From IMG/VR virus record IMGVR_UViG_3300009537_002640, positions 62,001 to 126,000 of that record: a DNA stretch of 64,000 nucleotides; one strand, 5' to 3'. The notes below the pieces were generated by a model. That model did not search any database, was not told the origin of the DNA, and saw only the letters and a list, made by a program, of their open reading frames with translations. The position numbers were made by a program, and so were the translations under genes. Shown one piece after another: positions 594-20,893 of the stretch (position 1 is the first letter of the stretch; every line of letters begins with the position of its first letter).

Positions 594-603
594 TGTTTTC
601 TCC

Positions 604-1434: not shown

Positions 1435-1438
1435 AACT

Positions 1439-4156: not shown

Positions 4157-4569
4157 GCATCTTTGTCCTCTGGCCCTACTGAGCCTGGCCCTCTCCTAGG
4201 ACTCTCGTAATCTTTCAAGAAGTCTCTAAGGTCTTTCGCACTGCTACCGTCCTCTCTAAGCCTGAAGCCCCTATCATCCACATATATATCTCCTAATATT
4301 TTGCCCAAGTGTAGCTCGTGAAACTTAACTCCCCAGCCCTCTAGTTGTGATTTAGTAAGACAGTACCAATCCTTGTAGGCTAAAGCTCTATTACCATTGT
4401 GCTTACCCATACCTCGTGCTGTGTGAAATATTATGTAATGCCCCGCATCGTACATTTCATTTATCACTGCTATCATGTCTTCATAAGGATATGCATCCTC
4501 ATAATGTCCGTTTGTGTTATTGCAAATAGTTCCGTCGATGTCGAACACTAAACGCCACTTTTGATTCAT
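4153..4569 (-). CDS. Small HAD-family phosphatase (capsule-biosynthesis EcbF-like)
   Basis: FDIDGTIC (motif I), HTARG (II), GK (III), DIYVDD (IV). Confidence 0.85.
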   Translation of the reverse strand: MNQKWRLVFDIDGTICNNTNGHYEDAYPYEDMIAVINEMYDAGHYIIFHTARGMGKHNGNRALAYKDWYCLTKSQLEGWGVKFHELHLGKILGDIYVDDRGFRLREDGSSAKDLRDFLKDYESPRRGPGSVGPEDKDA

Positions 4570-7515: not shown

Positions 7516-8342
7516 ACAAATGAACCTTCTCCCTCTGGATAAAACTTCACCAGTGGCACATATTCTTTCATAAAGGCTATTTCTGCCTCGTTGTATTTCT
7601 TAGTATAGGTGCGAGTAGTTGTATTAAATATAGTGGCGTCAGTCTCCTGTATGCCATCAAAACTTACAGTCACCACCAACTGCCCATCAAACTCTGGATG
7701 CTTCTCCACAAACTCATTCACTATCTGCCTTAGCTTCATAGCCTTTTGAATGGGGGTCTTTTCGTCAAACTGATGGCCAACCTTATCGGTGATATCCTTA
7801 GCTGGAGAGCCACCATACACATGATTAGGCTCCATATCCTTTGTGATAACTGAGCCCACTAATGCCATACTCTTCTCACCAATCTTAACAGGAGAAACTA
7901 TACAGTGTCCAACAAGCCAGGCGTCTTTACCTATATACATAGGCTTACGGGAATGCCATCTGGGATTAAGCCCCTCAACTAAATCTCCGAACTGAGCGTG
8001 AGTCCATATTTGACTATGGGCACCTATACCTACGCCGTCATCTATTGTTAAGCCCCCAAGAGAATCTAGCACTGTATTCCCGCCAATCCAACAACACCTG
8101 CCTATCTTCATTGGCAAGGAGCCATGAGCAAATGCAAATGCATGAAGTTTAGAATAGTCTCCGAGCCTAAACTCAGGTACTATAATTCTAGATTCTCTGC
8201 CTATATAGCAGAAATCACCAAGCACAACTTTCTCAGCAGGGCCACCTTTGCCCGTGATTACTACGCCTTCCTCTATAACTACTCCGCGCCCTATCTGTAT
8301 GTCCTTGGCATTTATTTTGCCACGGATATCACTCTCAATCAT
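7512..8342 (-). CDS. Hexapeptide-repeat (left-handed beta-helix) acyltransferase
   Basis: Repeated IG...I hexapeptides, QIWTH, KIGEKSMALVGSVITKD, YGGSPAK. Confidence 0.85.
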   Translation of the reverse strand: MIESDIRGKINAKDIQIGRGVVIEEGVVITGKGGPAEKVVLGDFCYIGRESRIIVPEFRLGDYSKLHAFAFAHGSLPMKIGRCCWIGGNTVLDSLGGLTIDDGVGIGAHSQIWTHAQFGDLVEGLNPRWHSRKPMYIGKDAWLVGHCIVSPVKIGEKSMALVGSVITKDMEPNHVYGGSPAKDITDKVGHQFDEKTPIQKAMKLRQIVNEFVEKHPEFDGQLVVTVSFDGIQETDATIFNTTTRTYTKKYNEAEIAFMKEYVPLVKFYPEGEGSFV

Positions 8343-9637
8343 GTCTTATCTCCAGACATCTCCTTTTTGAAAATGGTCACTGAGCGCTCACCTTCTAGAT
8401 ATTTATCTATAGCGTCTTCTTTTACAGCCTGACCAACAAACTTAAGACTCTCTTTCATAGCATTGATTGTTTGAGTAATGTGTTCTGGTTTATGAGCCCA
8501 AATCACATTTACATTTGTACCCATGAGAATGCCTCGCTTAACCATTTCTTGATGAAACAAATCCTTAACGCCGCCTGGGTCATCAGTCTCGAACTTAGCT
8601 ACTAATCTTGGTCCGATGCCTACCATATGGGCATTGATACCATTCTGCTTGCATAGTTGATTAAATGCCTCTCTAATTGCTGCGCCTTGAGTCCAAAGAT
8701 AAGGATAGATATCATTCTTACCTTCCTTTAGTTCCTTAACAGTCTCTATAGCAGCAGCTATAGAGCAAGCCTCGCCACCAAATGTTGAGGAGAAGAAAAC
8801 ATGGTCTAGCTCTTGCATATACTTCCTCTTGCCCGCAAGAACTGAGATTGGCATCCCATTAGATATCGCCTTACCAAACGTAGCCATATCTGGAACAACC
8901 CCATAGTATTCTTGTGCGCCACCTAATGCCAGCCTAAAACCAGTTATCATTTCATCGAATATTAGAATAGTTTCATACCTGTCACACAGCTCTCTTACGC
9001 CCTCTAAGAATCCTGGCTTAGGAGGGTCTAGAGCAACTGGCTCCATAATAACTGCTGCAAACTTTCCAGTCTTAAGCTTCTCTTCCAAACTGTCCAGATT
9101 GTTATATTCAAATCGTTCTACCAGAGACTTTAGACACTTTGGTAGCCCGTAATCTCTTGGGGTAGCTGCAGCAAAGAAATCTGCCCAACCATGATAATGG
9201 CCTTCTGGACTCAATATATGCTCCTTGCCAGTATGTGCTCTGGCAACACGGACAGCAATAGAAGTCACATCAGAACCATTCTTGCCATACCTAACCTGCT
9301 CAGCACATGGAATTACATCATATAGAAGTTCAGCAAGCTCTACCTCTACAGGGTGCATTAGGGAAAATACGCTGCCTTTCCTAATTTGCTGTTCCACTGC
9401 CTTAACTGTTCTTTTATGCGAGTATCCCAAGATAACAGCACCGAGGCCACATGGATAATCTATATACCAGTTGCCATCTACATCCTTTACCTTACAGCCT
9501 TCACCGCGCTCTAAATAGATTGGATGAACCCCGAAGACATATTGGTCGGGAGCCTTACTCATTGTTTGCGTACCACGAGGCATCAATTCAACTCCTCGCT
9601 TCCACAGTTCTAATGACTTAGTAATTTTTCTTGACAT
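8339..9637 (-). CDS. Class III PLP aminotransferase (glutamate-1-semialdehyde aminomutase-like, glycan-cluster type)
   Basis: DVDGNWYID, ILGY, KNGSD, HYHGW, IFDEMITGFR, PDMATFGKAISNGMP, STFGG. Confidence 0.9.
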   Translation of the reverse strand: MSRKITKSLELWKRGVELMPRGTQTMSKAPDQYVFGVHPIYLERGEGCKVKDVDGNWYIDYPCGLGAVILGYSHKRTVKAVEQQIRKGSVFSLMHPVEVELAELLYDVIPCAEQVRYGKNGSDVTSIAVRVARAHTGKEHILSPEGHYHGWADFFAAATPRDYGLPKCLKSLVERFEYNNLDSLEEKLKTGKFAAVIMEPVALDPPKPGFLEGVRELCDRYETILIFDEMITGFRLALGGAQEYYGVVPDMATFGKAISNGMPISVLAGKRKYMQELDHVFFSSTFGGEACSIAAAIETVKELKEGKNDIYPYLWTQGAAIREAFNQLCKQNGINAHMVGIGPRLVAKFETDDPGGVKDLFHQEMVKRGILMGTNVNVIWAHKPEHITQTINAMKESLKFVGQAVKEDAIDKYLEGERSVTIFKKEMSGDKT

Positions 9638-9649
9638 GTTAAACTCCTC

Positions 9650-10210
9650 TTATTGCCATTCCTGCAATTTGTAAAAACGGTGGGCTGCTAGATAATCCCC
9701 CTCTAAAAAATACTCTTGTGGGATAACGCAATACTCTTTGAACCCATTTCTATCTAGCACTTTAATAGAGCCTATGTTGCCTTCTACCACACCCGCTTCA
9801 ATCTTATTCATGTTGAGTCTATTGAAGCAATAATCTGAGAGAAGACTCACTACCTCGGTAGCTATACCTGCACCCCAGTAGTTTTCTTCCCCTATCATGT
9901 ATCCAACTTCTGCTCGTCTAGAAATCCAATCAATGCTATTTATAGATGTTGTCCCTATATAGTTGAGATACTCGTTGTCTTGAACTAGTGCATCCTTAAC
10001 TTTATCATAGGACAAATTGGACATCATTGCGAACCTCATTTCCCTTTGTCCATCTGGAATTGTTATTTCCTCTCTACACAAAGGTATGCGACCGGCGAAC
10101 ATATATCTATTAACCCTATGGTCATTAAGCCAATCTATGTATTTAGCAGTCACGTGACGGTCTGTGAATTTTACCAGTCTAACCTTGCTGCCCTTCAAGT
10201 ATTCCATCAC
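9650..10210 (-). CDS. GNAT N-acetyltransferase (PseH/RimL-like)
   Basis: YIDWLND, AEVGYMIGE..YWGAGIATE, LNMNKIEAGV..NIGSIKVLDRNGF. Confidence 0.85.
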   Translation of the reverse strand: MMEYLKGSKVRLVKFTDRHVTAKYIDWLNDHRVNRYMFAGRIPLCREEITIPDGQREMRFAMMSNLSYDKVKDALVQDNEYLNYIGTTSINSIDWISRRAEVGYMIGEENYWGAGIATEVVSLLSDYCFNRLNMNKIEAGVVEGNIGSIKVLDRNGFKEYCVIPQEYFLEGDYLAAHRFYKLQEWQ

Positions 10211-10458
10211 ATCACCCGCGTGTATTTTATTTCATCCGTATCTTGCCTAAACTCTACAGCGAACTTCTTAATCCTTCGCATATCACTTCCGCGAACCTCG
10301 GTGCGCTTAAATACACCTTGTTTAATAACCTCTCTCCAGCTCACATAAACAACAGTCCACTCTTTGCCAGAGTTTCTAGAGGTGCCATCTTCAGCATACA
10401 ACTTGGCTTCCTTTGTTAATACAGCTTCATATAGCTTTACTATAGCTGGGTCTATCAT
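10207..10458 (-). CDS. Hypothetical protein
   Basis: 83-aa ORF with 4-nt start/stop overlaps on both sides. Confidence 0.6.
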   Translation of the reverse strand: MIDPAIVKLYEAVLTKEAKLYAEDGTSRNSGKEWTVVYVSWREVIKQGVFKRTEVRGSDMRRIKKFAVEFRQDTDEIKYTRVM

Positions 10459-10877
10459 TGTTTACCTCCCAATTGATCCATAGCTCGTGCAACAAGTTCA
10501 CTGGAACTCTGTGCCTTTTCACCACCTAGATTCCATACGAGCTTTATGTCTAGTTCTTCACACAAAGCAACCTCGGGAGTATTTTCATTCTTCCTGTCGC
10601 CACCATTCCCAAAATACATCACACCGGCCCTATGTTCCCTTAGAGCCTCACACACCGTATCGTCGCTGTCGTCAACTGGAACTACATACTCTACGTTTTC
10701 AAGATTCAATAATATCTCGCAGCGTTCTTCCCATGGCATAAACACGTAGCCCTTCTTTCTCTTGAGCCAGGCGTCACTATTGAGGATGATAAGAACTTTG
10801 TCCACTTTAGCAGCATCGTTTATCATCCTCAGGTGCCCAATATGCAACGGGTCAAAACCACCAGACAAAGCTATCAT
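10455..10877 (-). CDS. HxGH cytidylyltransferase (TagD/glycerol-3-phosphate cytidylyltransferase-like)
   Basis: SGGFDPLHIGHL, LNSDAWL.RKKG, FGNGGDR, SSS. Confidence 0.88.
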   Translation of the reverse strand: MIALSGGFDPLHIGHLRMINDAAKVDKVLIILNSDAWLKRKKGYVFMPWEERCEILLNLENVEYVVPVDDSDDTVCEALREHRAGVMYFGNGGDRKNENTPEVALCEELDIKLVWNLGGEKAQSSSELVARAMDQLGGKQ

Positions 10878-11587
10878 ACCATTGCATCCTTTATAGCCTT
10901 ATTTAAGTCTCCGTGCTTATCATACTCTCTTGTTAAAGCTACCAACATATCGTAATCTTCTTTAGTATCGAATGAAAAATCTTTGATTTTCTGACTGATT
11001 TGACTATTAGGCCGATTATTTAGAAATGGATAAATATCATACTTGGTGCCTACCCTGTACATATATGGGCTAACGTGCTCTCTCATCTGTTGGTCTTTGG
11101 CATATTTCCATGTTTCAGCCAACATCCAATAAGGAAATATTTCTACATCAGTTCCGTCTGGATATGGATTAGGAGATATCAACCCATTGTTTCCCATAAA
11201 GCCATTGTATCCTCTACTAAGATATTCAATCAACATTTCGTCTATGATATATCCTTGAATGAGAGGACAGTCTGCCGTAACCCTAACTATTAGGTTAATT
11301 CCCACTCTTCTGGCTGCTTGGAAATATCTATCCACTAAATCGTCAGAATCTCCAAAATAAACACTAAACCGGCCGTCCACAACTTCAGTAAACTCACCCT
11401 TGCTGTCTCGCTCTAAAAACTCTTGTTTATCATACTCTGGCATAGCAAGCACAATCCTCTGTGGTACTGCTGCACTCTTAACACCTTCCAAGACTCGCTG
11501 TAATGTATATTTGCCATTGATATCCTGATATGTCTTTCTAGGAAATCTATTAGAACCTGTGCGTGCCTGAATTATAACTCCAATCAT
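10874..11587 (-). CDS. SpsF/PseF-like CMP-sugar cytidylyltransferase
   Basis: IIQARTGSNRFPRK, DLVDRY, IVRVTADCPL, YPDGTDVE, REHVSPY, FDTKEDY. Start moved to ATG 11587, which follows a GGAG RBS. Confidence 0.88.
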   Translation of the reverse strand: MIGVIIQARTGSNRFPRKTYQDINGKYTLQRVLEGVKSAAVPQRIVLAMPEYDKQEFLERDSKGEFTEVVDGRFSVYFGDSDDLVDRYFQAARRVGINLIVRVTADCPLIQGYIIDEMLIEYLSRGYNGFMGNNGLISPNPYPDGTDVEIFPYWMLAETWKYAKDQQMREHVSPYMYRVGTKYDIYPFLNNRPNSQISQKIKDFSFDTKEDYDMLVALTREYDKHGDLNKAIKDAMV

Positions 11588-11675
11588 TCTACACTCCAAC
11601 TTATAAAAGCTTTCGCACCTACCCCCTAAGATATTATGGTAAGTGCCCGAATAAACACAATATTACCTGCTTAGT

Positions 11676-12527
11676 TTAACTGCTTGTTTTGACATTATTT
11701 AAATCCTCGATAATGCTACATATTCTAGCAGAACCCCTGCCATCAATATAGCTCTTAGCGAATCTACTCAAAGACTCTCTTTTGTAACTACTCTCTAACA
11801 ATTCCTCCACATGGCCCTTAAGACGCAACATATCACTCTCTATACATCCCTCTGGAAACATTTTTATGTTAGTGAGCTGATGTTCATACTGAGGAATTGC
11901 GATTGTGGGTAGCCCGAAACACATAGCTTGTATCAGAGTAAGCCCACCGTTAGTTATTCCTATCATACAGTCTTGCATGGCGTTATAGTAGTCATCCTCA
12001 GTTAAAACCTCTACGTTCTTAAAAAACATCTTGAAATTAGAATGGTTTATACTCCTAGCCACTATCACTGGCACATCCATAGATTCTAGCATTCTGACTA
12101 CTCTGTATGCCAAATTATTAGCGTCAAAGCCTCCCATGGCAACAAATGCTGTTTTAGACTTAGTGTCCAGTCTATATGTTTCGCTATAAGAGGGCTTCGG
12201 TATAGCAAAGTACTTCGCGCCCTGATACTGTGCAAGTGGATTATAAATAGCGCTAACGCTTGCGTCTACCAACTCTACATCTTCTTCGGCACCATCTATA
12301 AGCACAACCTTTACTCCCGCAGCTTTCGCCTTAAGTATCAAGTCCCTTTGGGTGTGTATATGGTCAACTACAAGAACCTTTGCTTCTGGATTACATTCCC
12401 TATTCTGAACCCAAGATGTAACATGACCTCTGGAGGATAGTTCGCGTGCAATTTCCAATAATCTGTATAAATGCCCGGTACCTATTTCACGCTTCTCTCC
12501 ATGTTCACAAAACAAAGAAACATGCAT
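11676..12527 (-). CDS. PseG/SpsG-like nucleotide-sugar hydrolase (GT-B fold)
   Basis: IGTGHLYRLLEIA, VAMGGFD, ITNGGLTL..AMCFGLP, EHQL, IDGRGSARI. Confidence 0.82.
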   Translation of the reverse strand: MHVSLFCEHGEKREIGTGHLYRLLEIARELSSRGHVTSWVQNRECNPEAKVLVVDHIHTQRDLILKAKAAGVKVVLIDGAEEDVELVDASVSAIYNPLAQYQGAKYFAIPKPSYSETYRLDTKSKTAFVAMGGFDANNLAYRVVRMLESMDVPVIVARSINHSNFKMFFKNVEVLTEDDYYNAMQDCMIGITNGGLTLIQAMCFGLPTIAIPQYEHQLTNIKMFPEGCIESDMLRLKGHVEELLESSYKRESLSRFAKSYIDGRGSARICSIIEDLNNVKTSS

Positions 12528-13351
12528 TATGAATATCTCCTATAAGGCACTGACCCTTGTTCTATATCCTGCAACCCTATCGTACCATCTCCAAGCATTG
12601 ACTCATGTTCGCGTATGGCATCTATCATGTCTCTCATCATTCTTGGGTCAGCTGATACAGCATTATCTGGAGAGCCATCATTCAAGTCAAGCGTAAAGTG
12701 CTTTTCTACAACTGTAGCTCCCATAAATACAGATAGGGATGGGACTAAAATATCATTAGTGTGGTCACTATACCCAACCTCTATCCTTCCGTGCAATAAC
12801 CTGCGTAAAGTTTTAATTGCACTCAGGTTTACCTCATGTTCTGGTGTTGGATAAGAAGAAACGCAATGCAACACGGCCAGTGAATTTACGTCTGGCAAGC
12901 ATGTGAGTGCGCTAGAAAGCTCAGCCGGGTTAGCCATTCCAGTAGACATCACTACCTTTAGTGCCGCATATCTTTTTGCACACTCGTTAATTAGAACCAA
13001 TTGAATGCGGTTTGTTAAGTCCATAGATGCTATCTTAACCCTTCTAACCCCCAGGTCTTCAACTAAGAATGCTAAAGAGTGCTCGTCAAACGGAGTGGAA
13101 AAAAATTCAATGCCAACTTTATCAGCGTGCCACTTAACATCAGCCGTTTGCTCATAGGACAGCTCGCACCTCTTTAGAATCTCGTATGCCCCTTGAGATG
13201 GATTAGACCTAAGGTCCGCCTGATAAGTTTGAAACTTAATGGCGTCTGCCCCGGCCTCTTTGGCTGCTTCGACAAGAGCCATTGCTTTTCCAACATCACC
13301 GCCATGATTTATTCCAGCTTCTGCAATTATAAACGCTTCTTTCTGATACAT
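12527..13351 (-). CDS. neuB: Nonulosonate synthase (NeuB/PseI/SpsE family), short form
   Basis: IIAEAGINHGGD, DAIKFQTY, FFSTPFD, KIAS, MSTGM, LHCVSSYP, GYSDHT, VEKHFTLD. Start set at ATG 13351 (GAGGAG RBS). Confidence 0.92.
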   Translation of the reverse strand: MYQKEAFIIAEAGINHGGDVGKAMALVEAAKEAGADAIKFQTYQADLRSNPSQGAYEILKRCELSYEQTADVKWHADKVGIEFFSTPFDEHSLAFLVEDLGVRRVKIASMDLTNRIQLVLINECAKRYAALKVVMSTGMANPAELSSALTCLPDVNSLAVLHCVSSYPTPEHEVNLSAIKTLRRLLHGRIEVGYSDHTNDILVPSLSVFMGATVVEKHFTLDLNDGSPDNAVSADPRMMRDMIDAIREHESMLGDGTIGLQDIEQGSVPYRRYS

Positions 13352-13362
13352 CTTCTCTCCTC

Positions 13363-15111
13363 TTACTCCACAGTTACACTTTTGGCCAAATTTCTTGGCT
13401 TGTCTATATTGCACCCGCGCAAATCAGCTACATGATATGCCAATAACTGAAGCACCACTGACGCTGTAAATACCGTGGCACTTTCGTGGTGTTCTGGTAT
13501 CTTAATGACTTTATCCACAATATGTTCTGCCAACTCATCGTTTTCGCCTACCACTGCAATTGTAAAAGCACCCCGAGCCTTTACTTCTTCAATATTGGAT
13601 AATACCTTTGGATACACATTACTGTATCTATCTGCTATAAAAATACATGGCACGTTGTGATGTATCAAAGCTATGGGGCCATGCTTTAGTTCACCAGCCG
13701 GATAAGCTTCGGCATGCACATATGAAATCTCTTTTAGTTTCAGGGCTCCCTCTTGAGCAATCGGCACTCCATAGCCCCTACCTAAAAAAAACATAGAGTT
13801 TGCATGATAGATATTTTTTGCTGCTTGCGCAATATTTTGTTCCTGTTGTAACACTTGCTCCATCAATTCTGGAACCCTATATACCCAATCCGGCAAATCC
13901 ACTAATGCATTTGCCAACATAAACAACACGGCCACTTGAGCAGTAAAAGACTTGGTTGAGGCCACACTAATCTCAGGACCAGCCCATGTACAAATACTGG
14001 CGTCAGCCTCTCGTGTCATTGTAGAACCAAGGCGATTAATTACAGTCAGAACATATACATTTTTTTCTTTTGCGAGCTTGATAGCCTCTAGAGTATCAGC
14101 GGTCTCTCCTGATTGACTTACTGCGACCATCACTACATCATCATCCAGAACTCTATTATAGTATCTAAGCTCTGATGCTAATCTAACATCACAATCTATC
14201 CCTTTCGATTCAAAATATATTTGGGCGGTTAGGCAAGCATGATAGCTGGTACCGCATGCAGTGAGCAGGATTTTCTTGTTCTGAAATTGATTCTTCTCAA
14301 CCAGTTCCATAATAGGAACCAGATTTCTTTCCCAGCATTCCCTGATAACTTCTGGTTGTTCAAAAATCTCTTTGTGCATATAGGTATCATGATTTTGATG
14401 CCCCAAGACACCAAACACATCACTCATAATACTAATCGTTTCTGCTCTTGTCTCGTTGCCATTTGCATCGTATAGTTTAATAGAGCCTGATGCAAGTTCA
14501 GCTGTTTGACCATCTTTCATCACTATAGCCTCACTGGCATGACCAATAAGCGCATAGATATCAGACGCCACCGCTGCACCTTTCTCGCAAACACCAATTA
14601 CCAGTGGAGATTGTTTACACGCCAACACTATTTTATCTGGCTCATTTGGAGACATTGCTACGAACGCATAAGAACCCTTGAGCAGTGGAAGGGTCTGTTG
14701 GAGCCGCATAAGTAATGTTCCATCGAAGCTATTAATAACACCAGCGGCTATTTCGGTGTCTGTTTGGGATACTGGATTATACCCCTCGGACAATTCTTTG
14801 TAGTTCTCTATTATCCCATTGTGTACCAATATTACATCACCCACCATATGCGGATGTGCATTAGTTTCATTCGGCTCCCCATGCGTGGCCCATCGTGTAT
14901 GACCAATAGCTATAGAAGATTTAACTGCTGTATCTAGCTTTTTGAAAAGATTAGATACCTCGCCCTTGGCTTTGATTAAGCTCACGCCATCCTCAAGCAA
15001 GTACGCTATACCCGCTGAATCATAGCCCCTATACTCCAAGGTTTTAAGCCCGTGCTTAACATTATGAATCGCATTCTTAGCGTCACTAATGAAGCCTACT
15101 ATTCCACACAT
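13363..15111 (-). CDS. glmS: Glutamine--fructose-6-phosphate transaminase (isomerizing)
   Basis: MCGIVG, LEYRGYDSAG, GHTRWATHG, HNGIIENY, SQSGETADT, EGALKLKEISY, ELKHGP, DKPRNLAKSVTVE. Confidence 0.97.
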   Translation of the reverse strand: MCGIVGFISDAKNAIHNVKHGLKTLEYRGYDSAGIAYLLEDGVSLIKAKGEVSNLFKKLDTAVKSSIAIGHTRWATHGEPNETNAHPHMVGDVILVHNGIIENYKELSEGYNPVSQTDTEIAAGVINSFDGTLLMRLQQTLPLLKGSYAFVAMSPNEPDKIVLACKQSPLVIGVCEKGAAVASDIYALIGHASEAIVMKDGQTAELASGSIKLYDANGNETRAETISIMSDVFGVLGHQNHDTYMHKEIFEQPEVIRECWERNLVPIMELVEKNQFQNKKILLTACGTSYHACLTAQIYFESKGIDCDVRLASELRYYNRVLDDDVVMVAVSQSGETADTLEAIKLAKEKNVYVLTVINRLGSTMTREADASICTWAGPEISVASTKSFTAQVAVLFMLANALVDLPDWVYRVPELMEQVLQQEQNIAQAAKNIYHANSMFFLGRGYGVPIAQEGALKLKEISYVHAEAYPAGELKHGPIALIHHNVPCIFIADRYSNVYPKVLSNIEEVKARGAFTIAVVGENDELAEHIVDKVIKIPEHHESATVFTASVVLQLLAYHVADLRGCNIDKPRNLAKSVTVE

Positions 15112-15119
15112 TTATTACC

Positions 15120-15833
15120 TCACCATGCACTTAGTCCACCGTCTACTACTAAATTCTGTCCCGTAATATAACTAGAGAGTGGGCTGAGCAAAAATAGAAT
15201 TGCATTCACAATTTCTTCAGGCTGTGCCATTCTTTGCATAGGCACTCGGTCTGAATATAGAAAATCGAATTGGGCATCATGGTTCTGCTGGATGCCGCCA
15301 GGACTCACTGCATTAACTCTAACACCCCTGGAAGCTAACAATACAGCTTGATATTTGGTTAACTGTATTACTCCTGCCTTAGATGCGCCATAAGCTACAG
15401 CATTGAATTCTTTTTCATCTCCCATATAAATACGAAAATCAGGACTGAGACATCCATATATACTAGCAACATTAACTATGCTAGCATTTTTGAGAGATTT
15501 GCTAAACCAATATATACAACTATTGGTTCCTGAAACATTAACGGAGAGCGTCTTTTCGAACTCATCTCTAGTAACATGTTTATCTGTACCTTTACATCCA
15601 ATCGCAGCGTTGTTAACCAAACCATCCAGGTACCCATATTTTGCGGTCACCCTGTGAAATAATTGAGATATAGAATGCTCATCAGACAAGTCCAAATCAT
15701 AATCGGCGTCATGTAAATCTGCACCTATGGGATTTGCTCCCTCTACGGTTAAGGCTCTCATAATATGCTGACCCAGAAATCCAGCCGAACCAGTCACCAA
15801 TATATTCTTGTCTTTAAGTTGGAATGTACACAT
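15120..15833 (-). CDS. SDR oxidoreductase (PtmA-like, nonulosonate-cluster type)
   Basis: VTGSAGFLG, LVNNAA, ASIYG..PDFRIY, YGASK, VNAVSPGG, ITGQNLVVDGG. Confidence 0.9.
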   Translation of the reverse strand: MCTFQLKDKNILVTGSAGFLGQHIMRALTVEGANPIGADLHDADYDLDLSDEHSISQLFHRVTAKYGYLDGLVNNAAIGCKGTDKHVTRDEFEKTLSVNVSGTNSCIYWFSKSLKNASIVNVASIYGCLSPDFRIYMGDEKEFNAVAYGASKAGVIQLTKYQAVLLASRGVRVNAVSPGGIQQNHDAQFDFLYSDRVPMQRMAQPEEIVNAILFLLSPLSSYITGQNLVVDGGLSAW

Positions 15834-15834
15834 A

Positions 15835-16140
15835 TCAATACTCTATATACTGAATCATATTTCCTATAAAATCTGCCAGGTTTCCCTCATCTATCTCTAT
15901 ATTTTCTTCTCTGATATTAAGCCCGCCATCTTTACTCATGAACTTAGATATAACCCTGTTGTCTCTAAGGGCCATCTTGTAAAAAGTCTTAGCTGCCCCT
16001 TTAACAGAATCATCAGAGTTGTTCAAAGTAATATTACAATTGGAAACAACCACCTTGAGATTCTTCTCTCGTATGTTATCCAGAGTCTTATCGAACTCTC
16101 CCATGTCACATGTAATATTACAATTAGTTATACTTAGCAT
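15835..16140 (-). CDS. Hypothetical protein
   Basis: 101-aa ORF filling the gap between two enzyme genes; the motif NCNIT occurs twice. Confidence 0.6.
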   Translation of the reverse strand: MLSITNCNITCDMGEFDKTLDNIREKNLKVVVSNCNITLNNSDDSVKGAAKTFYKMALRDNRVISKFMSKDGGLNIREENIEIDEGNLADFIGNMIQYIEY

Positions 16141-16141
16141 C

Positions 16142-17368
16142 TTATCTCCTGTAAAACTTCAGAACTTTCCTTACTGCTTCTATTACATCTGTCACGTCCT
16201 GGTCAGTTAATTTAGAGGACAGTGGTAACGAGATTGTTCTGTCTGAAACCCATTGTGCATTGGGGAAATCTTTTGCTGTCCAACCATAAGTCTTAGTATA
16301 ATAAGGGTGCGTGTGAATTGCCTGATAATGAACCCCTACACCAATACCCTCTTCTTTTAGTGCACCTAGGACAAAATCTCTATTAACCCTAAGTTGGTCT
16401 AACTTCAACTCAATAGTATATAGATGGTGCCCATGCTTAATGTTAGAGGGGTATTCGGCTGGAGTATATAGTGGTAATCCAGACAGCTGCTCGTTGTATT
16501 GTCTCCATATATGATTTCTGCGTTGCCACGACGCTTCGATGCGTTGTAACTGGCAAACACCTATTGACGCCACCAAGTCCATCATATTGTACTTAAAACC
16601 AGGAGCCAGCACTTTGTAGTGTTGGAAACCTTCTGCACCATAACGATTATGGGCATTCCTAGATAACCCATGTAGAGACATCATTCTGACTTCTTTCTCA
16701 ATCTCCTCGTTATCTGTAATCAGCATTCCTCCCTCGCCACAAGAGATGTTCTTAGTGACATAGAAAGAGAACGCACCAACATCTCCAAACGTACCGGCAT
16801 GTTTTCCGTCTATAGTGGTCTCTATGGCATGAGCACAATCCTCTATAACATACAGACTGTATCGTTTGGCTATCTCTGTTATTGGCTCCATATCACATGG
16901 CATCCCACACATGTGAACTGGAATGATAGCCTTGGTGCGTGGAGTTATCTTAGATTCGATTTGCTTCCAATCAATGTTCTGTGTCTTGCGACTAATATCA
17001 CAAAGCACAGGCTTCAACCCACTGTGAACGATAGAAGATATGGTCGCAGTGAATGTAAGGTCTGTGCTTATTACCTCATCGCCAGGTTGAAGGCCCAGTG
17101 ACACAAGAGCAAGATGTAGCGCAGCAGTACAAGAGGAGGTTCCGACTGCATACTTACTTCCTTTGTATGCAGAGAACAGCTTCTCAAATGCTATGGTTTT
17201 TGGACCAGTACTTAACCATCCCGACTTTAATGTGTTAACCACTTCATCGATTTCCGGCTGTTGTATATCAGGGCTACCAAAGACTAGAAAATTCTGTCTA
17301 ACTGGTGTCCCGCCCTCAACGGCTGGAATACTATTGGTCACTGTTTTCGGTGCTACGCTAAAACTCAT
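16142..17368 (-). CDS. DegT/DnrJ/EryC1/StrS sugar aminotransferase (PseC/SpsC-like)
   Basis: SGWLSTGPK, SCTAALHLA, IIPVHMCG, IEDCAHA, FSFYVTKNISCGEGG, GFKYNM, SLPLS. Confidence 0.93.
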   Translation of the reverse strand: MSFSVAPKTVTNSIPAVEGGTPVRQNFLVFGSPDIQQPEIDEVVNTLKSGWLSTGPKTIAFEKLFSAYKGSKYAVGTSSCTAALHLALVSLGLQPGDEVISTDLTFTATISSIVHSGLKPVLCDISRKTQNIDWKQIESKITPRTKAIIPVHMCGMPCDMEPITEIAKRYSLYVIEDCAHAIETTIDGKHAGTFGDVGAFSFYVTKNISCGEGGMLITDNEEIEKEVRMMSLHGLSRNAHNRYGAEGFQHYKVLAPGFKYNMMDLVASIGVCQLQRIEASWQRRNHIWRQYNEQLSGLPLYTPAEYPSNIKHGHHLYTIELKLDQLRVNRDFVLGALKEEGIGVGVHYQAIHTHPYYTKTYGWTAKDFPNAQWVSDRTISLPLSSKLTDQDVTDVIEAVRKVLKFYRR

Positions 17369-17369
17369 C

Positions 17370-18314
17370 TTACTTTATATACTCCGCATAATGTGTTAGG
17401 AACGATCCTACGTTCTCATGTTTTTTGATAACTAAAGGAAAGAGCAAAGATTCAGCTTCATCCATAGTAAGGTTTCTTTCAAACTTAACTCTTCTTCCGT
17501 AGCCGCCTGGTTTAATCTGCTTCTTCCAATGACTAAACCTATAGTAAGCCGAAAAGAATGCCCACCTGTCTTCTGGTGAGATTGCCCTAATGTCACTCAC
17601 CTTAAACTCCACAGGCTCAACTAAGCGTTTCGCCAAGTCTGAGTTTCTTACTATCTTTCTCAGCAAGCCTCTTCGCCTGCTACTATTTTGCAAATCTTTA
17701 GCACTATATCCAAGACAACTATACTTATCAGTGTCTCTTAGTACAGCCTTAAGCTTTTCATTCTTAAGTCCTTGTGGGACAAAGCCAACAAACTCTCTAA
17801 GTATTGGTGGTGCTATAACATCTGCAGAATATTGAATCAGCTTCAATGGGTCTACTCTACCTGCCGCAAGATGCTTCTTGACCATCTTCTTATAGGTAGT
17901 CTTGGTAAAATATTTCTGGTCGCCGTATCTTGATCCATACTTATACGTGTGGCTCCATTGCCTATCGCTCTTACTATATGCGCATGAAAAAGATTTGATG
18001 AGCATATCGCCGAATTTCTTTTGCACAGACTTTGGAAACTTATCAATGATAGCATCTGTAAAGATGATATTCGAGTCTCCCATGCCATATGTTTTATTCT
18101 CGCTGTCGCTTAGCATTTTCTCCATTCTAGATGTAAGCAAATCGAACAGCTGCTCTTTGTCTTTTTTTCGTGCGCCTTCATAAAGCGCTAACCACTCTTG
18201 GTTGCTAAAACTAATATCGCTTTCATATGCAGATATGAAGTCCATAAAAACCTGTGGTGATTTCTTATACATCTTAACCAGGGATTGTGTTCCCCCTTGA
18301 AAATCAAAACTCAT
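17370..18314 (-). CDS. Hypothetical protein (basic, probably helical)
   Basis: 314-aa in-operon ORF; no motif recognised. Confidence 0.7.
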   Translation of the reverse strand: MSFDFQGGTQSLVKMYKKSPQVFMDFISAYESDISFSNQEWLALYEGARKKDKEQLFDLLTSRMEKMLSDSENKTYGMGDSNIIFTDAIIDKFPKSVQKKFGDMLIKSFSCAYSKSDRQWSHTYKYGSRYGDQKYFTKTTYKKMVKKHLAAGRVDPLKLIQYSADVIAPPILREFVGFVPQGLKNEKLKAVLRDTDKYSCLGYSAKDLQNSSRRRGLLRKIVRNSDLAKRLVEPVEFKVSDIRAISPEDRWAFFSAYYRFSHWKKQIKPGGYGRRVKFERNLTMDEAESLLFPLVIKKHENVGSFLTHYAEYIK

Positions 18315-18327
18315 TATAAGCCTTTCG

Positions 18328-18570
18328 TTATATCTTATATTTATCTATGAATGAATTAGTGTCTTTCGTTTCTAGACAACTGCTACCTCTAGTCCAGTTG
18401 CCATCTCCCGTATATATGTTTATACCCCAAATGTCCTCGCCACTTAAAGCGTCAACCACTTTATTGGAGCGATAAATATAAGTAATTTTTCCATTACCAT
18501 CATTCTGCCCACCAGTAATAGGCGGCTTTAGTGTCCACTGATAAAGAAACTGAAGAACCGGGTCAATCAT
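18328..18570 (-). CDS. Hypothetical protein
   Basis: 80-aa ORF with an ATGA overlap with the upstream gene. Confidence 0.55.
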   Translation of the reverse strand: MIDPVLQFLYQWTLKPPITGGQNDGNGKITYIYRSNKVVDALSGEDIWGINIYTGDGNWTRGSSCLETKDTNSFIDKYKI

Positions 18571-19715
18571 TCGTCAAACCCTCTAAGTTCATCTGCGGTA
18601 AATTGCTCAACATTGTCAGATGTATATTCGAATGATTCTACCTTTGGCTCATCAGGATAGCTAATATCCCACCCAAGACTTCTGTCAGTAACTCCTGGCG
18701 GAACAATCTTGTAATACTTGCCACAGTCTACGGTGTACAATACCTCTGTCTTTGATATCAGGTCTTCATGTATCTTCTCGTAACCCCTCAGCCCAATGAA
18801 CTCTACAGGGATGCCGGGAGCAAATGTTTCAGCAAACGCCATAATGCTTGTGGCTTTAAGCTTGGGTATGAATATCTCGCCGCCTATTGTGTTGTTAAGG
18901 GCAAACAGATTTAGATTAACCGCTTCATCCATTGACATAAAGAATCTGGTCATATCTTTGTGCGTAACTTTAACTTCGCCTTCTTTAGCCTGCTGTTCAA
19001 ACAATTGTCTCACAGAACCATTGGAACCATAAACGTTTCCATATCTTGTGCAAGTAAAGACTGTCCCATTTTTGCCAGAATAATTGTTGCCGTTGATAAA
19101 TACTTGTTCAGCAACAAACTTTGTTCCACCATACAAGGTGGCTGGCGCACAGGCTTTATCTGTAGAAACCAGAAGCGCCTTACCTACGTTGTTCTCTATA
19201 CAGGACTCTAAAACATTCACGCTTCCTATTACATTGCTCTTCACAGCTTCAATTGGATTATAAGTGCAGGTTTCCACTCGCTTCATACAGGCAGCATGAA
19301 TACAAACATCCACACCACGCAAAGCTCGCTCTAATCTTTTCCTATCCCTTATATCACCTATCAAATATCGTATGTTTATCTTGTCGGAAAACTTGGCTCT
19401 CATTCTTGCCTGCTTTAATTCACAGCGACTAAAGATGATAACCTTCTTAGCCACGTCAACTATACGCTCTGTTAAAGCATGTCCAAGAGAACCCGTGCCA
19501 CCAGTGATAAGCACAACTTTCCCACGAACGGCGTCTAGATCAGAACCGTCTCGTTTGTATTTAGTCTTTCCTGACATTTCAAGGAACTGGTCATGCGTAT
19601 AGAACATACGCCCAGAAGGTTTGCGTTGGGCTACAAGTTTGCCTTCCTTGTCCCAGTTTCGCAAGGTTTGAACAGAAACCCCAAGTTTTTCAGCCATTTC
19701 AGTTGTCGAATACAC
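18567..19715 (-). CDS. pseB: UDP-GlcNAc 4,6-dehydratase (PseB/FlaA1-like) with N-terminal MerR/IS607-type HTH fusion
   Basis: aa 1-48 EMAEKLGVSVQTLRNWDKEGKL..RKPSGRMFY (HTH). Then ITGGTGSLG, FSRCELKQ, YNPIEAVKSN, STDKAC.PATLYGGTK, RYGNV.GS.GS, MTRF, GGEIFIPK, EKIHE. GTG start with GGAGG RBS. Confidence 0.9.
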   Translation of the reverse strand: MYSTTEMAEKLGVSVQTLRNWDKEGKLVAQRKPSGRMFYTHDQFLEMSGKTKYKRDGSDLDAVRGKVVLITGGTGSLGHALTERIVDVAKKVIIFSRCELKQARMRAKFSDKINIRYLIGDIRDRKRLERALRGVDVCIHAACMKRVETCTYNPIEAVKSNVIGSVNVLESCIENNVGKALLVSTDKACAPATLYGGTKFVAEQVFINGNNYSGKNGTVFTCTRYGNVYGSNGSVRQLFEQQAKEGEVKVTHKDMTRFFMSMDEAVNLNLFALNNTIGGEIFIPKLKATSIMAFAETFAPGIPVEFIGLRGYEKIHEDLISKTEVLYTVDCGKYYKIVPPGVTDRSLGWDISYPDEPKVESFEYTSDNVEQFTADELRGFDE

Positions 19716-19774
19716 GGATGTCCTCCTATATAATATGCCATCATATTAGTAGATTTTACGGTGTTTGGGGTTAT

Positions 19775-19805
19775 ATTATGACACAAATGTATAAAAATGT
19801 GTTAA
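19775..19805 (-). promoter_or_regulatory. Putative sigma70-like promoter with 10-bp direct repeats in the spacer
   Basis: Minus strand reads TTAACA-19 nt-CATAAT with a TG extended -10. The spacer region holds ACATTTTTAT ACATTTGTGT. It lies in one of the few intergenic gaps. Confidence 0.4.
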
Positions 19806-20893
19806 GATAGAATGTCTTTTACTATAGCCTGAGAGCTGTTGGGGGGAGTCATTCCGACATATTGAGACAACCAGTCTTCTATTGCTAGACCGTCTGGCTG
19901 GGGCGGGATTAGTTGAAAGTCCGGAGATAGTGCTTCTTCTTGACTCACACTCCAGACGGCCTCTCTAAAGTTATACACTGGGCTTTCAAAGTAATCTTTC
20001 ATCTTCTTCTTATCATGAGACCAGCGCTTGAGGTTCAGAGGGATATTCACCACATGTTTACCTGCTACCATACACTCATAGATACCCGAGCTATAGAACA
20101 TGACTACACAATGAGTTTCAGCAAAGGCTCCAGAAATTGACGGCGGATACATTTTGTCGCCGTCATCTATTATCAAAGCACCATACTTCTTTAGCTCATC
20201 CGGCATCCATTGTTTCTTGCGCGTTTTGAATATTAGATGGTGCTCGTTACCTCTGCAGATATTATCCATCATCTTTAGGAAATTGTCTTTTCCCCCAAAA
20301 GCAATCTGGACATGCTCTGCTAAAAGATTCGGCAGCAATACTAATAGCCCTGGCCTTGGAACAATATCTGACCTAAGCCCGTCATAAATAGGGGAGCCTA
20401 ACCACTTATCACGCTTCGGGTCTAGCTTTAGCCCGAGCATATCAAGGTGCAGATTCATTAGATGTTGAGATGAATAATAGACACGATCACATGACGTGAT
20501 ATTTTTAGGGTCGGGAGTCCACAAAGAATCCGTAAGGTAAAGGATATTGTAAATCCCAATATTGTTTTTCTTCAGTTCGTTTATGTAGTCTTTGGCCCAC
20601 AAGTAAACCTCAAGACTTACCAGTTTAGTTATCTTATCATGAACCAATTGTTTGAGGAGTTGATTATCATTACCAAACGCTTTTACTTTAGCGGCATTGG
20701 CAACAACCCCTGGGGACGATAGTTTTAGCTTAGCCAAACTTGCTCGATTGTATTCTTTACTGCCTCGCGGAGCATCAAAGTGGTATAGGACATAGGGTGC
20801 ACCTGTCCTGTGAAGTTCCTCCATTATAGGATGGAGAACCTTTAGAAATGTTAATTCTCTAACTACTACTCCGATCATCGGCTGTGTATCCAT
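19802..20893 (-). CDS. GT-B fold putative glycosyl/sialyl-transferase
   Basis: LGSPIYD, IFKTRKK, VMFYSSGIYECMVAGKHVVNI; the C-terminal pattern is shared with 5321..6445 and 6442..7515. Confidence 0.55.
   Translation of the reverse strand: MDTQPMIGVVVRELTFLKVLHPIMEELHRTGAPYVLYHFDAPRGSKEYNRASLAKLKLSSPGVVANAAKVKAFGNDNQLLKQLVHDKITKLVSLEVYLWAKDYINELKKNNIGIYNILYLTDSLWTPDPKNITSCDRVYYSSQHLMNLHLDMLGLKLDPKRDKWLGSPIYDGLRSDIVPRPGLLVLLPNLLAEHVQIAFGGKDNFLKMMDNICRGNEHHLIFKTRKKQWMPDELKKYGALIIDDGDKMYPPSISGAFAETHCVVMFYSSGIYECMVAGKHVVNIPLNLKRWSHDKKKMKDYFESPVYNFREAVWSVSQEEALSPDFQLIPPQPDGLAIEDWLSQYVGMTPPNSSQAIVKDILS

What the first reader, a model, noticed from the sequence alone, without database searches (positions are those of the whole stretch)
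18567..19715. MerR/IS607-type helix-turn-helix fused to the first pathway enzyme (PseB-like)
Seen: about 50 N-terminal residues match the winged HTH found at the N-terminus of IS607 resolvases and excisionase-like MerR domains. They are in frame with an intact dehydratase and preceded by a GGAGG RBS; no recombinase catalytic domain or TnpB is nearby. Established: PseB is the committed step and is feedback-inhibited by CMP-Pse. Inference: a trigger enzyme that couples nucleotide-sugar status to transcription of the downstream operon, possibly domesticated from a transposon DNA-binding domain.
Basis: partly seen in the sequence, partly recalled or inferred. Interest (0 to 1): 0.78.

Follow-up and report, generated by a model that had tools for sequence, protein, structure and literature searches.

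The report
Transposase-type DNA-binding domain fused to PseB
A clade of giant environmental phages has joined a DNA-binding domain of the kind used by IS607 transposases to the first enzyme of a sialic-acid-like sugar pathway, most likely so the enzyme can sit on DNA and control its own operon, but DNA binding has not been tested.

Summary
Window 18567-19715 (- strand) is one 382-aa ORF. Residues 1-50 form a MerR-type winged helix-turn-helix, residues 51-65 a linker, and residues 66-382 a catalytically intact PseB-type UDP-GlcNAc 4,6-dehydratase. The closest non-fusion relatives of the HTH are genuine IS607 transposases (51% identity, including the linker helix). No recombinase or TnpB gene lies in the 206-kb phage record.

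The fusion is not an accident. At least 73 sequence clusters carry it, on metagenomic contigs of up to 481 kb from huge phages, and I found it in none of 185,579 species genomes. The HTH is conserved about as well as the enzyme and is basic in all 32 aligned members.

In 10 of 10 loci the fusion gene follows an 81-215 nt gap that carries a phage promoter motif, and it heads the sugar-nucleotide module. In the 4 close relatives without the HTH whose context can be read, promoter and gap are missing too.

That fits the proposed autoregulating trigger enzyme but does not prove it:
- The promoter motif belongs to a genome-wide class (about 8 copies).
- I found no specific operator.
- A tested HTH/promoter co-variation failed.
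- The co-loss could be a single deletion.

Verdict: a real, conserved new variant of an HTH-enzyme fusion whose regulatory role is plausible but unshown.

The parts
18567..19715 (-). HTH-PseB fusion gene, 382 aa, GTG start, TGA stop
   Evidence: ORF list and sequence; Pfam and NCBIfam; 100% match in the genome record
19566..19715 (-). Residues 1-50: MerR/IS607-type winged helix-turn-helix (strand, helix 1, helix 2, beta-hairpin wing, helix 3)
   Evidence: Pfam MerR, MerR_1 and HTH_17. AF2 secondary structure. Foldseek matches to DNA-bound HiNmlR, RacA, TipAL, CarH, BldC and Xis. 51% identity to an IS607 TnpA.
19521..19565 (-). Residues 51-65: linker. The first part (GK.KYK) is specific to the fusion. 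The last part (DLDAV.GK) is already the N-terminus of the dehydratase, as seen in HTH-less relatives.
   Evidence: Alignment A1; N-termini of HTH-less P0058, P0076 and P0077; lowest conservation, 42% mean pairwise identity; pLDDT 73
18570..19520 (-). Residues 66-382: PseB-type UDP-GlcNAc 4,6-dehydratase (extended SDR). The TGGTGSLG cofactor motif and D186, K187, Y195 and K199 are invariant.
   Evidence: Polysacc_synt_2 E 4.7e-80. TIGR03589 337.9 bits. Foldseek best hit 2gn4, 38% identity, TM 0.88. Sequence alignment to 2gn4. Invariant columns.
19721..19726 (-). Shine-Dalgarno GGAGGA, 5 nt before the GTG
   Evidence: Read from the sequence
19743..19756 (-). Upstream element of a phage promoter class, AAATCTACTAATAT
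   Evidence: Exact motif. Found upstream of the fusion gene in 10/10 loci. About 8 copies on the coding strand of the 206-kb record. 7 of 8 and 4 of 5 exact hits on the coding strand in two related records.
19725..19732 (-). TATATAGG, the -10-like second element of that promoter class. It overlaps the Shine-Dalgarno, so transcripts from this promoter may have almost no leader.
   Evidence: Comparison of promoter copies. The transcription start is inferred, not measured.
19716..19801 (-). 86-nt intergenic gap. It is present in all fusion loci (81-215 nt) and absent in HTH-less relatives.
   Evidence: Gene tables; junction sequences
19802..20893 (-). Conserved 363-aa gene of unknown function that always precedes the dehydratase gene, with or without the HTH
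   Evidence: No Pfam family; homologues of 30-49% identity in the corresponding position in L090, L092-L097, L180 (the extended L007 locus) and L203 (the extended L014 locus)
93..18314 (-). Downstream sugar-nucleotide module, with no further copy of the promoter motif inside the window. It includes a PseC-like aminotransferase (16142-17368), an SDR, a GlmS-like enzyme (13363-15111), two NeuB (12527-13414, 604-1434), a PseG-like gene (11676-12527), two CMP-transferases (10874-11599, 3470-4156), a GNAT (9650-10210), a class III aminotransferase and others.
   Evidence: Pfam and NCBIfam; motif positions

Best explanation
The gene encodes a single bifunctional protein. A catalytically competent PseB-type UDP-GlcNAc 4,6-dehydratase carries at its N-terminus a MerR-type winged HTH captured from an IS607-family transposase.

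The fusion arose once in a clade of huge environmental phages and has been kept by selection. It is the first gene behind a phage promoter that starts the roughly 30-kb nonulosonic-acid and glycan precursor module.

The most likely mechanism is inferred, not shown:
1. The HTH on its own is monomeric, because it lacks the MerR coiled coil.
2. The oligomeric dehydratase body brings several HTH copies together, so the enzyme binds DNA with avidity in or next to its own promoter region.
3. Occupancy, and with it transcription of the module, then depends on how much enzyme there is and on its ligand state (UDP-GlcNAc and NADP(H) as substrates, CMP-nonulosonate as end-product inhibitor).

That is a trigger-enzyme autoregulator. 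It would keep the phage from draining the host's UDP-GlcNAc pool more than needed.

Shown: architecture, fold, catalytic residues, conservation, origin of the HTH, position behind a promoter, joint absence of HTH and promoter in relatives.

Inferred: DNA binding, binding site, ligand dependence, direction of regulation.
For: Architecture and start codon.

Intact enzyme: invariant D186, K187, Y195 and K199 plus the cofactor motif. The best structural and sequence match is H. pylori PseB, 2gn4.

DNA-binding-type fold: every Foldseek and profile match is a DNA-binding MerR-type wHTH, and most come from DNA complexes.

Selection on the HTH:
- 73 of 79 clade members in the tree have it.
- Mean pairwise identity is 58% for the HTH against 62% for the enzyme and 42% for the linker.
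- Net charge is +4 to +11 in 32 of 32 aligned members.
- L18, W21, A29 and Y39 are invariant.
- The HTH type changes at least 17 times on the enzyme tree, yet an HTH is kept each time.

Context: 10 of 10 fusion loci have an 81-215 nt gap with the promoter motif directly upstream. All 4 readable HTH-less close relatives abut or overlap the same upstream gene (-4 to +11 nt), with no gap and no motif.

The enzyme works without the HTH: there are cellular PseBs and at least 3 losses inside the clade. The HTH therefore adds a function instead of supporting catalysis.

Established knowledge: CMP-pseudaminic acid inhibits PseB (McNally et al. 2008, cited as ref. 41 in PMC8540345). H. pylori PseB is a hexamer, and BirA, NadR and PutA are enzymes with fused DNA-binding domains that regulate their own pathways (both from my own knowledge).
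Against: I found no operator. The only conserved upstream words are the two elements of a general promoter class that also precedes the tail sheath gene, a cold-shock-like gene and others.

Promoter and HTH-coding DNA are adjacent, so one deletion or one recombination event can remove both without any functional link. Only 1 contrast on well-supported branches, and 3 on all branches, backs the co-loss.

HTH type and promoter variant matched in 9 loci, but the tenth, L302, broke the pattern.

Position 19, the Arg of the TLR motif, varies among R, Q, M and I.

Feedback at the level of transcription is of less obvious use in a lytic cycle.

No RNA or protein data were available.
Confidence: 0.4

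Rival explanations
1. DNA tether without transcriptional control. The HTH only anchors the dehydratase oligomer on DNA, for example on the replicating phage genome or near its own gene. This would work the way RacA and the pSK1 Par protein use the same fold to anchor or partition DNA. The effect would be to localise the first pathway step or to nucleate an enzyme assembly.
For: RacA (5i41, 5i44) and the pSK1 Par DNA-binding domain (8csh) are among the best sequence and structure matches, and RacA aligns over residues 5-60. The domain is uniformly basic. No specific operator was detected. IS607 transposases are described as having minimal target specificity (PMC4058570).
Against: There is no obvious benefit in placing a soluble nucleotide-sugar enzyme on DNA. 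It does not explain why the HTH is missing exactly where the gene has no promoter of its own.
Confidence: 0.2
2. No DNA role. The HTH has been kept as a protein-protein or intramolecular module, for example to stabilise or gate the oligomer or to recruit the next enzymes. Or it is a nearly neutral remnant of an old IS607 insertion in front of pseB.
For: HTH pLDDT rises from about 87 when modelled alone to about 90 in the full-length model, and the linker rises from under 50 to 73. That would fit docking onto the enzyme. The DNA-contacting Arg19 is not invariant. The HTH has been lost at least 3 times with the gene still intact.
Against: Conservation is nearly equal to that of the enzyme, with no decay, frameshift or truncation in 73 clusters. 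All members stay strongly basic. HTH types are repeatedly swapped, but an HTH is always retained. A neutral remnant would not behave this way. I had no way to inspect inter-domain contacts in the model.
Confidence: 0.2
3. Global phage transcription factor. The HTH recognises the TCTAYYAATA element shared by the whole promoter class, so the dehydratase gates many operons, structural genes included, on nucleotide-sugar status.
For: The motif is the only conserved upstream sequence and lies in front of the fusion gene in 10 of 10 loci. The class has about 8 copies in G000 and similar numbers in two related records, all on the coding strand. HTH type and motif variant agreed in 9 of 10 loci.
Against: L302 pairs an MYS-type HTH with the ATC motif variant, while its sister L300 pairs a TY-type HTH with the same variant. 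Only 2 independent contrasts exist, p = 0.5. Related phages do without the HTH. A phage sigma factor or RNA polymerase explains a promoter class more simply.
Confidence: 0.07
4. Not a fusion in vivo. Translation starts after the HTH, or the assembly is chimeric, so the enzyme is made without the domain.
For: The -10-like element overlaps the Shine-Dalgarno, so transcripts from this promoter may have only a few bases of leader before a GTG. The database gene call starts at codon 7.
Against: The same continuous frame occurs in independent ENA, JGI, Logan and NCBI assemblies. Y2 and S3 upstream of codon 7 are conserved. No ribosome-binding site precedes M37 or M47. Other loci have longer leaders that contain a Shine-Dalgarno.
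Confidence: 0.03

Closest known systems
PseB / FlaA1 of Helicobacter pylori (PDB 2gn4), UDP-GlcNAc inverting 4,6-dehydratase
   Same: Best sequence match (E 2.5e-74 over residues 65-372) and best structural match (38% identity, TM 0.88). It shares the STDK...YG.TK active-site motif and the cofactor motif. It is also the first enzyme of a pathway whose PseC-, PseH-, PseG-, PseI- and PseF-like genes lie downstream.
   Different: PseB has no N-terminal domain. The window protein scores 337.9 bits, below the NCBIfam equivalog cut-off of 407.75, so the exact product (Pse-type or another 6-deoxy-hexosamine route such as FnlA, CapE or Pen) is not settled.
IS607-family serine transposase TnpA (NCBIfam NF033518), N-terminal MerR-type DNA-binding domain
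   Same: These are the closest relatives of residues 1-54: 51% identity, E 1e-16, including the Y-T-H-x-Q-Y-L helix after the wing. The viral and cellular hits are true IS607 TnpA, scoring 208-238 bits. The domain is N-terminal and followed by a short linker and a beta strand, as described in PMC4058570.
   Different: There is no serine-recombinase domain in the gene or anywhere in the 206-kb record, and no TnpB. The whole protein scores 26.5 bits against a cut-off of 110. It is not part of a mobile element.
Enzymes with a fused DNA-binding domain that regulate their own pathway (BirA, NadR, PutA)
   Same: One polypeptide combines a pathway enzyme with an N-terminal DNA-binding domain, and the gene sits at the head of the pathway operon. 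This is the working model (own knowledge).
   Different: The folds and pathways differ. Those proteins are cellular and their DNA binding has been demonstrated. Here nothing is demonstrated, and the host is a phage.
MerR-type HTH proteins without the canonical coiled coil (CarH, BldC, RacA)
   Same: The winged HTH is the same. Oligomerisation, and therefore DNA binding, comes from another domain (the B12 domain in CarH) or from head-to-tail packing on repeats (BldC).
   Different: None of them carries a catalytic domain. The partner here is an SDR enzyme.
KKM64059.1 / UniRef100_A0A0F9J2Y1, 'HTH merR-type domain-containing protein', marine sediment metagenome
   Same: Same two-domain architecture, 78% identical to the window protein.
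   Different: It carries only an automatic name. I found no study of it or of the architecture.

Membership tests
MerR-family transcription regulators | N-terminal winged helix-turn-helix of the MerR type | tested here: met
   PF00376 40.1 bits (cut-off 28.2) and PF13411 35.4 bits (cut-off 21.6). The AF2 fold is strand, helix 1, helix 2, wing, helix 3. Foldseek rmsd is 1.0-1.5 A to HiNmlR, CarH, TipAL and CueR.
MerR-family transcription regulators | Long antiparallel coiled-coil dimerisation helix after the HTH | tested here: not met
   After helix 3 (residues 41-47) come about 18 residues of linker and then strand 1 of the Rossmann fold at 67-71. The model has no long helix.
MerR-family transcription regulators | C-terminal effector-binding region of the MerR type, and action on promoters with an over-long 19-20 bp spacer | tested here: inconclusive
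   The C-terminal part is an SDR enzyme, not a MerR effector domain. The upstream promoter has two elements about 10-12 nt apart, and no sigma-70-type site was found. The true -35, -10 and start site are unknown.
IS607-family transposase (TnpA) | N-terminal MerR-type DNA-binding domain | tested here: met
   51% identity to the N-terminus of a verified IS607 TnpA. Model positions 2-51 are matched.
IS607-family transposase (TnpA) | C-terminal serine-recombinase catalytic domain, and whole-protein score above the NF033518 cut-off | tested here: not met
   26.5 bits against a cut-off of 110. PF00239 is absent from the whole 206-kb record.
PseB, UDP-GlcNAc inverting 4,6-dehydratase (TIGR03589) | Equivalog score at or above the curated cut-off | tested here: not met
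   337.9 bits against 407.75. PseB is still the top family, ahead of FnlA at 227 bits.
PseB, UDP-GlcNAc inverting 4,6-dehydratase (TIGR03589) | Extended-SDR fold with cofactor motif and the Asp-Lys / Tyr-x3-Lys catalytic residues | tested here: met
   TGGTGSLG is present, and D186, K187, Y195 and K199 are invariant in 32 sequences. They align with STDKAANPINLYGATK of 2gn4. TM 0.88.
PseB, UDP-GlcNAc inverting 4,6-dehydratase (TIGR03589) | Pathway context (PseC, PseH, PseG, PseI, PseF) | tested here: met
   Downstream genes match PseC (342 bits), PseF (148 bits), NeuB/PseI (two genes), PseG (53 bits) and PseH (35 bits). All are below the equivalog cut-offs.
PseB, UDP-GlcNAc inverting 4,6-dehydratase (TIGR03589) | C5-inverting dehydratase activity on UDP-GlcNAc, and inhibition by CMP-Pse | not testable with these tools
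   Needs an enzyme assay.
Trigger enzymes (enzyme plus transcription regulator in one protein) | Sequence-specific DNA binding that changes transcription in response to the enzyme's ligands | not testable with these tools
   Only indirect evidence: a promoter directly upstream in 10 of 10 loci, and joint absence of HTH and promoter in 4 of 4. No operator was found.

The most novel reading that the evidence does not exclude
The HTH-PseB protein is a metabolite-sensing transcription factor of the phage itself. Its transposase-derived HTH recognises the TCTAYYAATA element shared by a whole class of phage promoters, including the one in front of the tail sheath operon. Expression of virion and glycan genes would then be gated by the nucleotide-sugar state of the infected cell. 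This would be a first phage-encoded trigger enzyme with a global role.
Probability: 0.07. Interest if true: 0.9.

Novelty: new variant of a known kind. Interest (0 to 1): 0.6.

Why it matters
Enzymes that double as DNA-binding regulators are known from a handful of cellular pathways. None is known for nonulosonic-acid synthesis, and as far as I could find none is known from a phage. Here the DNA-binding part was evidently taken from an IS607 transposase, so this would also be a clear case of a transposase domain put to new use by a virus.

If the protein binds its promoter in a ligand-dependent way, it would show how huge phages budget a host metabolite, UDP-GlcNAc, that the cell also needs for its wall. 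It would also give a compact sugar-nucleotide-responsive DNA-binding module.

The proposal is directly testable with one recombinant protein and an 86-bp DNA fragment.

If DNA binding is absent, what remains is a conserved but unexplained domain fusion, of modest interest.

Tried and rejected
1. Gene-specific operator. A k-mer search over eight upstream gaps found only the two promoter elements and AT-rich words. Short inverted repeats between the elements, such as AATATG-ATGG-CATATT in the window, are not conserved between loci (read).

2. Co-variation of HTH type (MYS... against ..TY.IG..) with the promoter variant (ACT/ATT against ATC). It held for 9 loci and genome-wide in three records. 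It failed for L302, and there are only 2 independent contrasts. Rejected as evidence.

3. The neighbouring 363-aa gene as a lineage marker. Its tree is star-like and uninformative.

4. A separate small HTH gene next to plain pseB in other viral contigs, as a precursor of the fusion. None was found within +/-6 kb in about 80 loci.

5. Other enzymes fused to this HTH. The top 150 of 7998 profile hits are small or tandem HTH proteins and the same fusion, one copy of which carries an intein.

7. RNA evidence for the transcript start. No RNA run holds the locus; one DNA run holds 6% of the sampled words.

8. Placement of the phage. Megablast of 15 kb of the window and tblastn of the sheath protein against 50,697 phage records found nothing.

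9. Whole-record motif searches in the large ENA and JGI contigs are not possible with these tools.

11. No sigma-70-type promoter or intrinsic terminator lies in 18200-21000.
Full report
THE OBSERVATION

Window 18567-19715 holds one uninterrupted ORF of 382 codons on the - strand. It starts with GTG and has GGAGGA 5 nt upstream.

Pfam places a MerR-type helix-turn-helix at residues 1-48. MerR scores 40.1 bits, MerR_1 35.4 and HTH_17 28.5, all above their cut-offs. Polysacc_synt_2 covers residues 68-337 (E 4.7e-80). NCBIfam aligns residues 6-55 with the first 50 positions of the IS607 transposase model and ranks PseB first for the rest.

The GTG start is preferable to the ATG at codon 7. Relatives start M-Y-S at the same place, Y2 is at least 90% conserved, and residues 2-3 form the first strand of the fold.

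The window is part of a 206,495-bp IMG/VR virus record that CheckV rates 25% complete. All long ORFs in the window lie on one strand. A tail sheath gene and other large structural-type proteins lie nearby. The record contains no other MerR-type HTH, no resolvase domain and no TnpB above cut-off.

THE ENZYME HALF

The AlphaFold model built on 32 family members is confident (pLDDT 90, pTM 0.85). Its best match among solved structures is H. pylori FlaA1/PseB, 2gn4 (38% identity, TM 0.88). Pen, WbjB, CapE and the Megavirus enzyme Mg534 follow.

The cofactor motif and D186, K187, Y195 and K199 are invariant in the family. They align with the STDK...YG.TK motif of 2gn4.

The score against the PseB equivalog model is 337.9 bits, under the cut-off of 407.75. 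I therefore call the protein PseB-type and do not assert the exact product.

Downstream lie PseC-, PseH-, PseG-, NeuB/PseI- (two) and PseF-like genes, a GlmS-like gene and further tailoring enzymes. Upstream lie several glycosyltransferases.

THE HTH HALF

Modelled alone, residues 1-50 fold as strand, helix, helix, beta-hairpin wing, helix. Every structural or profile match is a DNA-binding MerR-type domain: HiNmlR (40% identity, rmsd 1.2-1.5 A), RacA, the pSK1 Par protein, TipAL, CarH, BldC and a mycobacteriophage Xis. Most of these are from complexes with DNA. The long coiled coil that dimerises true MerR regulators is absent.

A profile of the domain finds 7998 proteins in 1.84 billion representatives.

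In viral contigs and in 185,579 species genomes, the closest relatives outside the fusion family are proteins of about 200-216 aa. They have an R-V-S-S/T serine-recombinase motif and occur in multiple copies in Ktedonobacter, Acinetobacter, H. pylori and lactobacilli. The five full-length viral examples score 208-238 bits against the IS607 transposase model (cut-off 110).

Identity to the window HTH is 51% over 53 residues (E 1e-16). It extends through the helix after the wing, Y-T-H-x-Q-Y-L. [quoted passage not shown] Capture of the 5' part of such a tnpA gene is therefore the best account of the domain's origin.

DISTRIBUTION AND SELECTION

The homology search returned about 80 clusters (at 90% identity) that cover the whole query at 47-87% identity and carry both domains. 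Below that level the hits are ordinary PseB proteins of about 325-340 aa.

The clusters come from independent ENA, JGI, Logan and NCBI assemblies. Several contigs measure 217-481 kb. Only two fusion sequences, both from a marine sediment metagenome, carry a public accession: KKM64059.1 / UniRef A0A0F9J2Y1, auto-named 'HTH merR-type domain-containing protein', and the partial KKL64748.1. I found no paper on the architecture.

None of 171 HTH relatives in the species-genome collection is joined to an SDR domain. IMG/VR holds only two further fusion records.

On a tree of the enzyme domain, the fusion clade (79 rows, SH-aLRT 100) includes a deep branch that also has the HTH. One gain at the base therefore fits, followed by 3-4 losses: P0058, P0070, P0075 and P0076/77. 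P0079 is truncated at its contig end.

Mean pairwise identity is 58% for the HTH, 42% for the linker and 62% for the enzyme. The HTH carries a net charge of +4 to +11 in all 32 aligned members. Nothing suggests decay.

HTH identity and enzyme identity are almost uncorrelated (r = 0.14). Two HTH types, MYS... and ..TY.IG.., need at least 17 changes on the enzyme tree. The 5' module has thus been exchanged often between phages, yet an HTH is kept each time.

CONTEXT

In ten distinct loci (window, L090, L092, L094, L095, L096, L007, L014, L300, L302) genes are otherwise tightly packed or overlapping. The fusion gene is nevertheless preceded by a gap of 81-215 nt. The gap contains AAATCTAYYAATAWT and, about 10-12 nt further on, a TATA-rich element ending in GG.

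The gene upstream is usually the same 360-aa protein of unknown function. In L300 and L302 the upstream genes are divergent instead.

In the four HTH-less clade members whose context can be read, the dehydratase gene overlaps or abuts the upstream gene (-4 to +11 nt), with no gap and no motif. These are P0077 (L093), P0058 (L097), P0070 (L098) and P0076. In L093 and L097 the upstream gene is demonstrably the same 360-aa gene.

So HTH and promoter appear and disappear together, as one cassette of about 250-400 bp between two conserved genes.

WHAT THE MOTIF IS

It is not a private operator. The 206-kb record has four exact and about four near copies. All are on the coding strand and upstream of genes that include the tail sheath, a cold-shock-like protein and a 1680-aa protein. 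Two related records have 8 and 5 exact copies, mostly on their coding strands. It is a phage promoter class.

Inside the window the next copy upstream lies in front of the sheath gene, and there is none downstream. The promoter at 19743-19756 should therefore start a unit that runs through the whole sugar-nucleotide module to about 11 kb beyond the window start.

In the window the -10-like element overlaps the Shine-Dalgarno. The motif starts only 41 nt before the GTG, against 49-193 nt at the other copies measured. The leader from this promoter may therefore be very short.

A TEST THAT FAILED

The own record uses TCTA(C/T)TAATA. The two related records use TCTATCAATA almost throughout. In nine loci the MYS-type HTH went with the first variant and the TY-type with the second.

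I used my last two look-ups on a sister pair with different HTH types. Both members have the ATC variant, so the rule breaks. With only two independent contrasts it was never significant. This lowers the idea that the HTH reads the variable positions of the promoter element.

MECHANISM

The enzyme works without the HTH in cells and in some clade members, so the HTH adds a function. Its fold, charge and ancestry point to DNA binding. Its constant association with the gene's own promoter points to that region as the target.

A lone MerR-type HTH needs a partner for avidity. PseB is an oligomer (a hexamer in H. pylori, from my own knowledge). PseB also binds UDP-GlcNAc and NADP(H) and is inhibited by CMP-pseudaminic acid (McNally et al. 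2008, cited in PMC8540345).

The most economical model is an autoregulating, possibly ligand-responsive, DNA-binding enzyme. I give it 0.4.

The rivals are:
- a pure DNA tether (0.2);
- a non-DNA role or near-neutral remnant (0.2);
- a global factor for the promoter class (0.07);
- a fusion that is not made in vivo (0.03).

The main weakness of the leading model is that promoter and HTH-coding DNA are adjacent. One deletion or one recombination event explains their joint behaviour without any function. On well-supported branches only one independent contrast exists.

COMPARISON AND VERDICT

The protein works like BirA, NadR or PutA only by hypothesis. It is not a MerR-family regulator, because the coiled coil and effector domain are missing. 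It is not an IS607 transposase, because the catalytic domain is missing. By the curated cut-off it is not a certified PseB equivalog, although fold, catalytic residues and context fit.

It is best filed as a new variant of the known kind 'enzyme fused to a DNA-binding domain'. It is confined, as far as sampled, to a clade of huge environmental phages, and its DNA-binding part was recruited from a transposase.

The decisive experiment is a gel shift and footprint with and without ligands, and it is simple.

Noticed in passing
window 19743-19756 (-); G000 198886, 183479, 173809, 163569, 126170 (= window 64170, just past the window end), 51053, 18132 (all - strand): A phage promoter class, AAATCTAYTAATAT followed about 10-12 nt later by a TATA-rich element ending in GG. 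It has about 8 copies on the coding strand of the 206-kb record, in front of the tail sheath gene, a cold-shock-like gene and others. Two related huge-phage records use the variant TCTATCAATA. It matches no sigma-70 consensus, and which polymerase or sigma factor reads it is unknown.
   Followed up: partly
P0130 (746 aa): One member of the fusion family carries an intein with a LAGLIDADG homing endonuclease, inserted in the dehydratase domain at about residues 196-552.
   Followed up: partly
window 18328-18570 (-): An 80-aa ORF whose ATG overlaps the stop of the fusion gene (ATGA). Homologous small ORFs of 64-70 aa follow the fusion gene in L095 (33% identity, E 3e-13), in L300 and weakly in L090. 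It has no family match and its function is unknown.
   Followed up: partly
window 61482-63938 (-) and beyond the window end: The tail sheath ORF listed from a TTG at 63938 (818 aa) can be extended to an ATG at window 64055 (857 aa). That start lies 115 nt behind a promoter copy, so the gene probably starts outside the window.
   Followed up: partly
L095:8127-8429: A 100-aa ORF with a Cas12f1-like/TnpB zinc-ribbon domain lies inside the sugar module of a related 312-kb phage contig, about 2 kb downstream of the fusion gene. It is a trace of IS605/IS607-type elements in these phages.
   Followed up: no
P0121 (1015 aa), P0122 (623 aa), P0140, P0142, P0144: Proteins made of many tandem copies of this HTH type (up to 16 matched stretches in one protein) top the profile search. 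Tandem MerR-type HTH arrays of this size seem unusual. I did not examine them.
   Followed up: no
window 93-18314 (-): The module has two NeuB-type synthases and two CMP-transferases, plus a GlmS-like amidotransferase, a pyruvyl transferase, a methyltransferase and an MptE-like protein. That suggests either two nonulosonic acids or one heavily tailored product. Related loci swap in formyltransferases, aldo-keto reductases, B12-radical-SAM enzymes and sulfotransferases.
   Followed up: partly
window 22369-22671 (-): A DUF4326 protein (100 aa) is conserved in the same upstream neighbourhood in L095 and L096.
   Followed up: no
whole record G000: CheckV rates the 206-kb record 25% complete, and relatives sit on contigs of up to 481 kb. 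The sheath protein and 15 kb of window DNA have no match among 50,697 deposited phage genomes. The lineage appears to have no cultured or named relative in that collection.
   Followed up: partly
Protein-atlas hits 1-2: Two bacterial clusters of PseB-like proteins (463 aa and 374 aa, mostly Thermodesulfobacteriota) also have N-terminal extensions: about 95 residues in the 463-aa cluster, judged from structure alignments to plain PseB. No Pfam family is recorded for the extensions. Whether they are DNA-binding is unknown.
   Followed up: no
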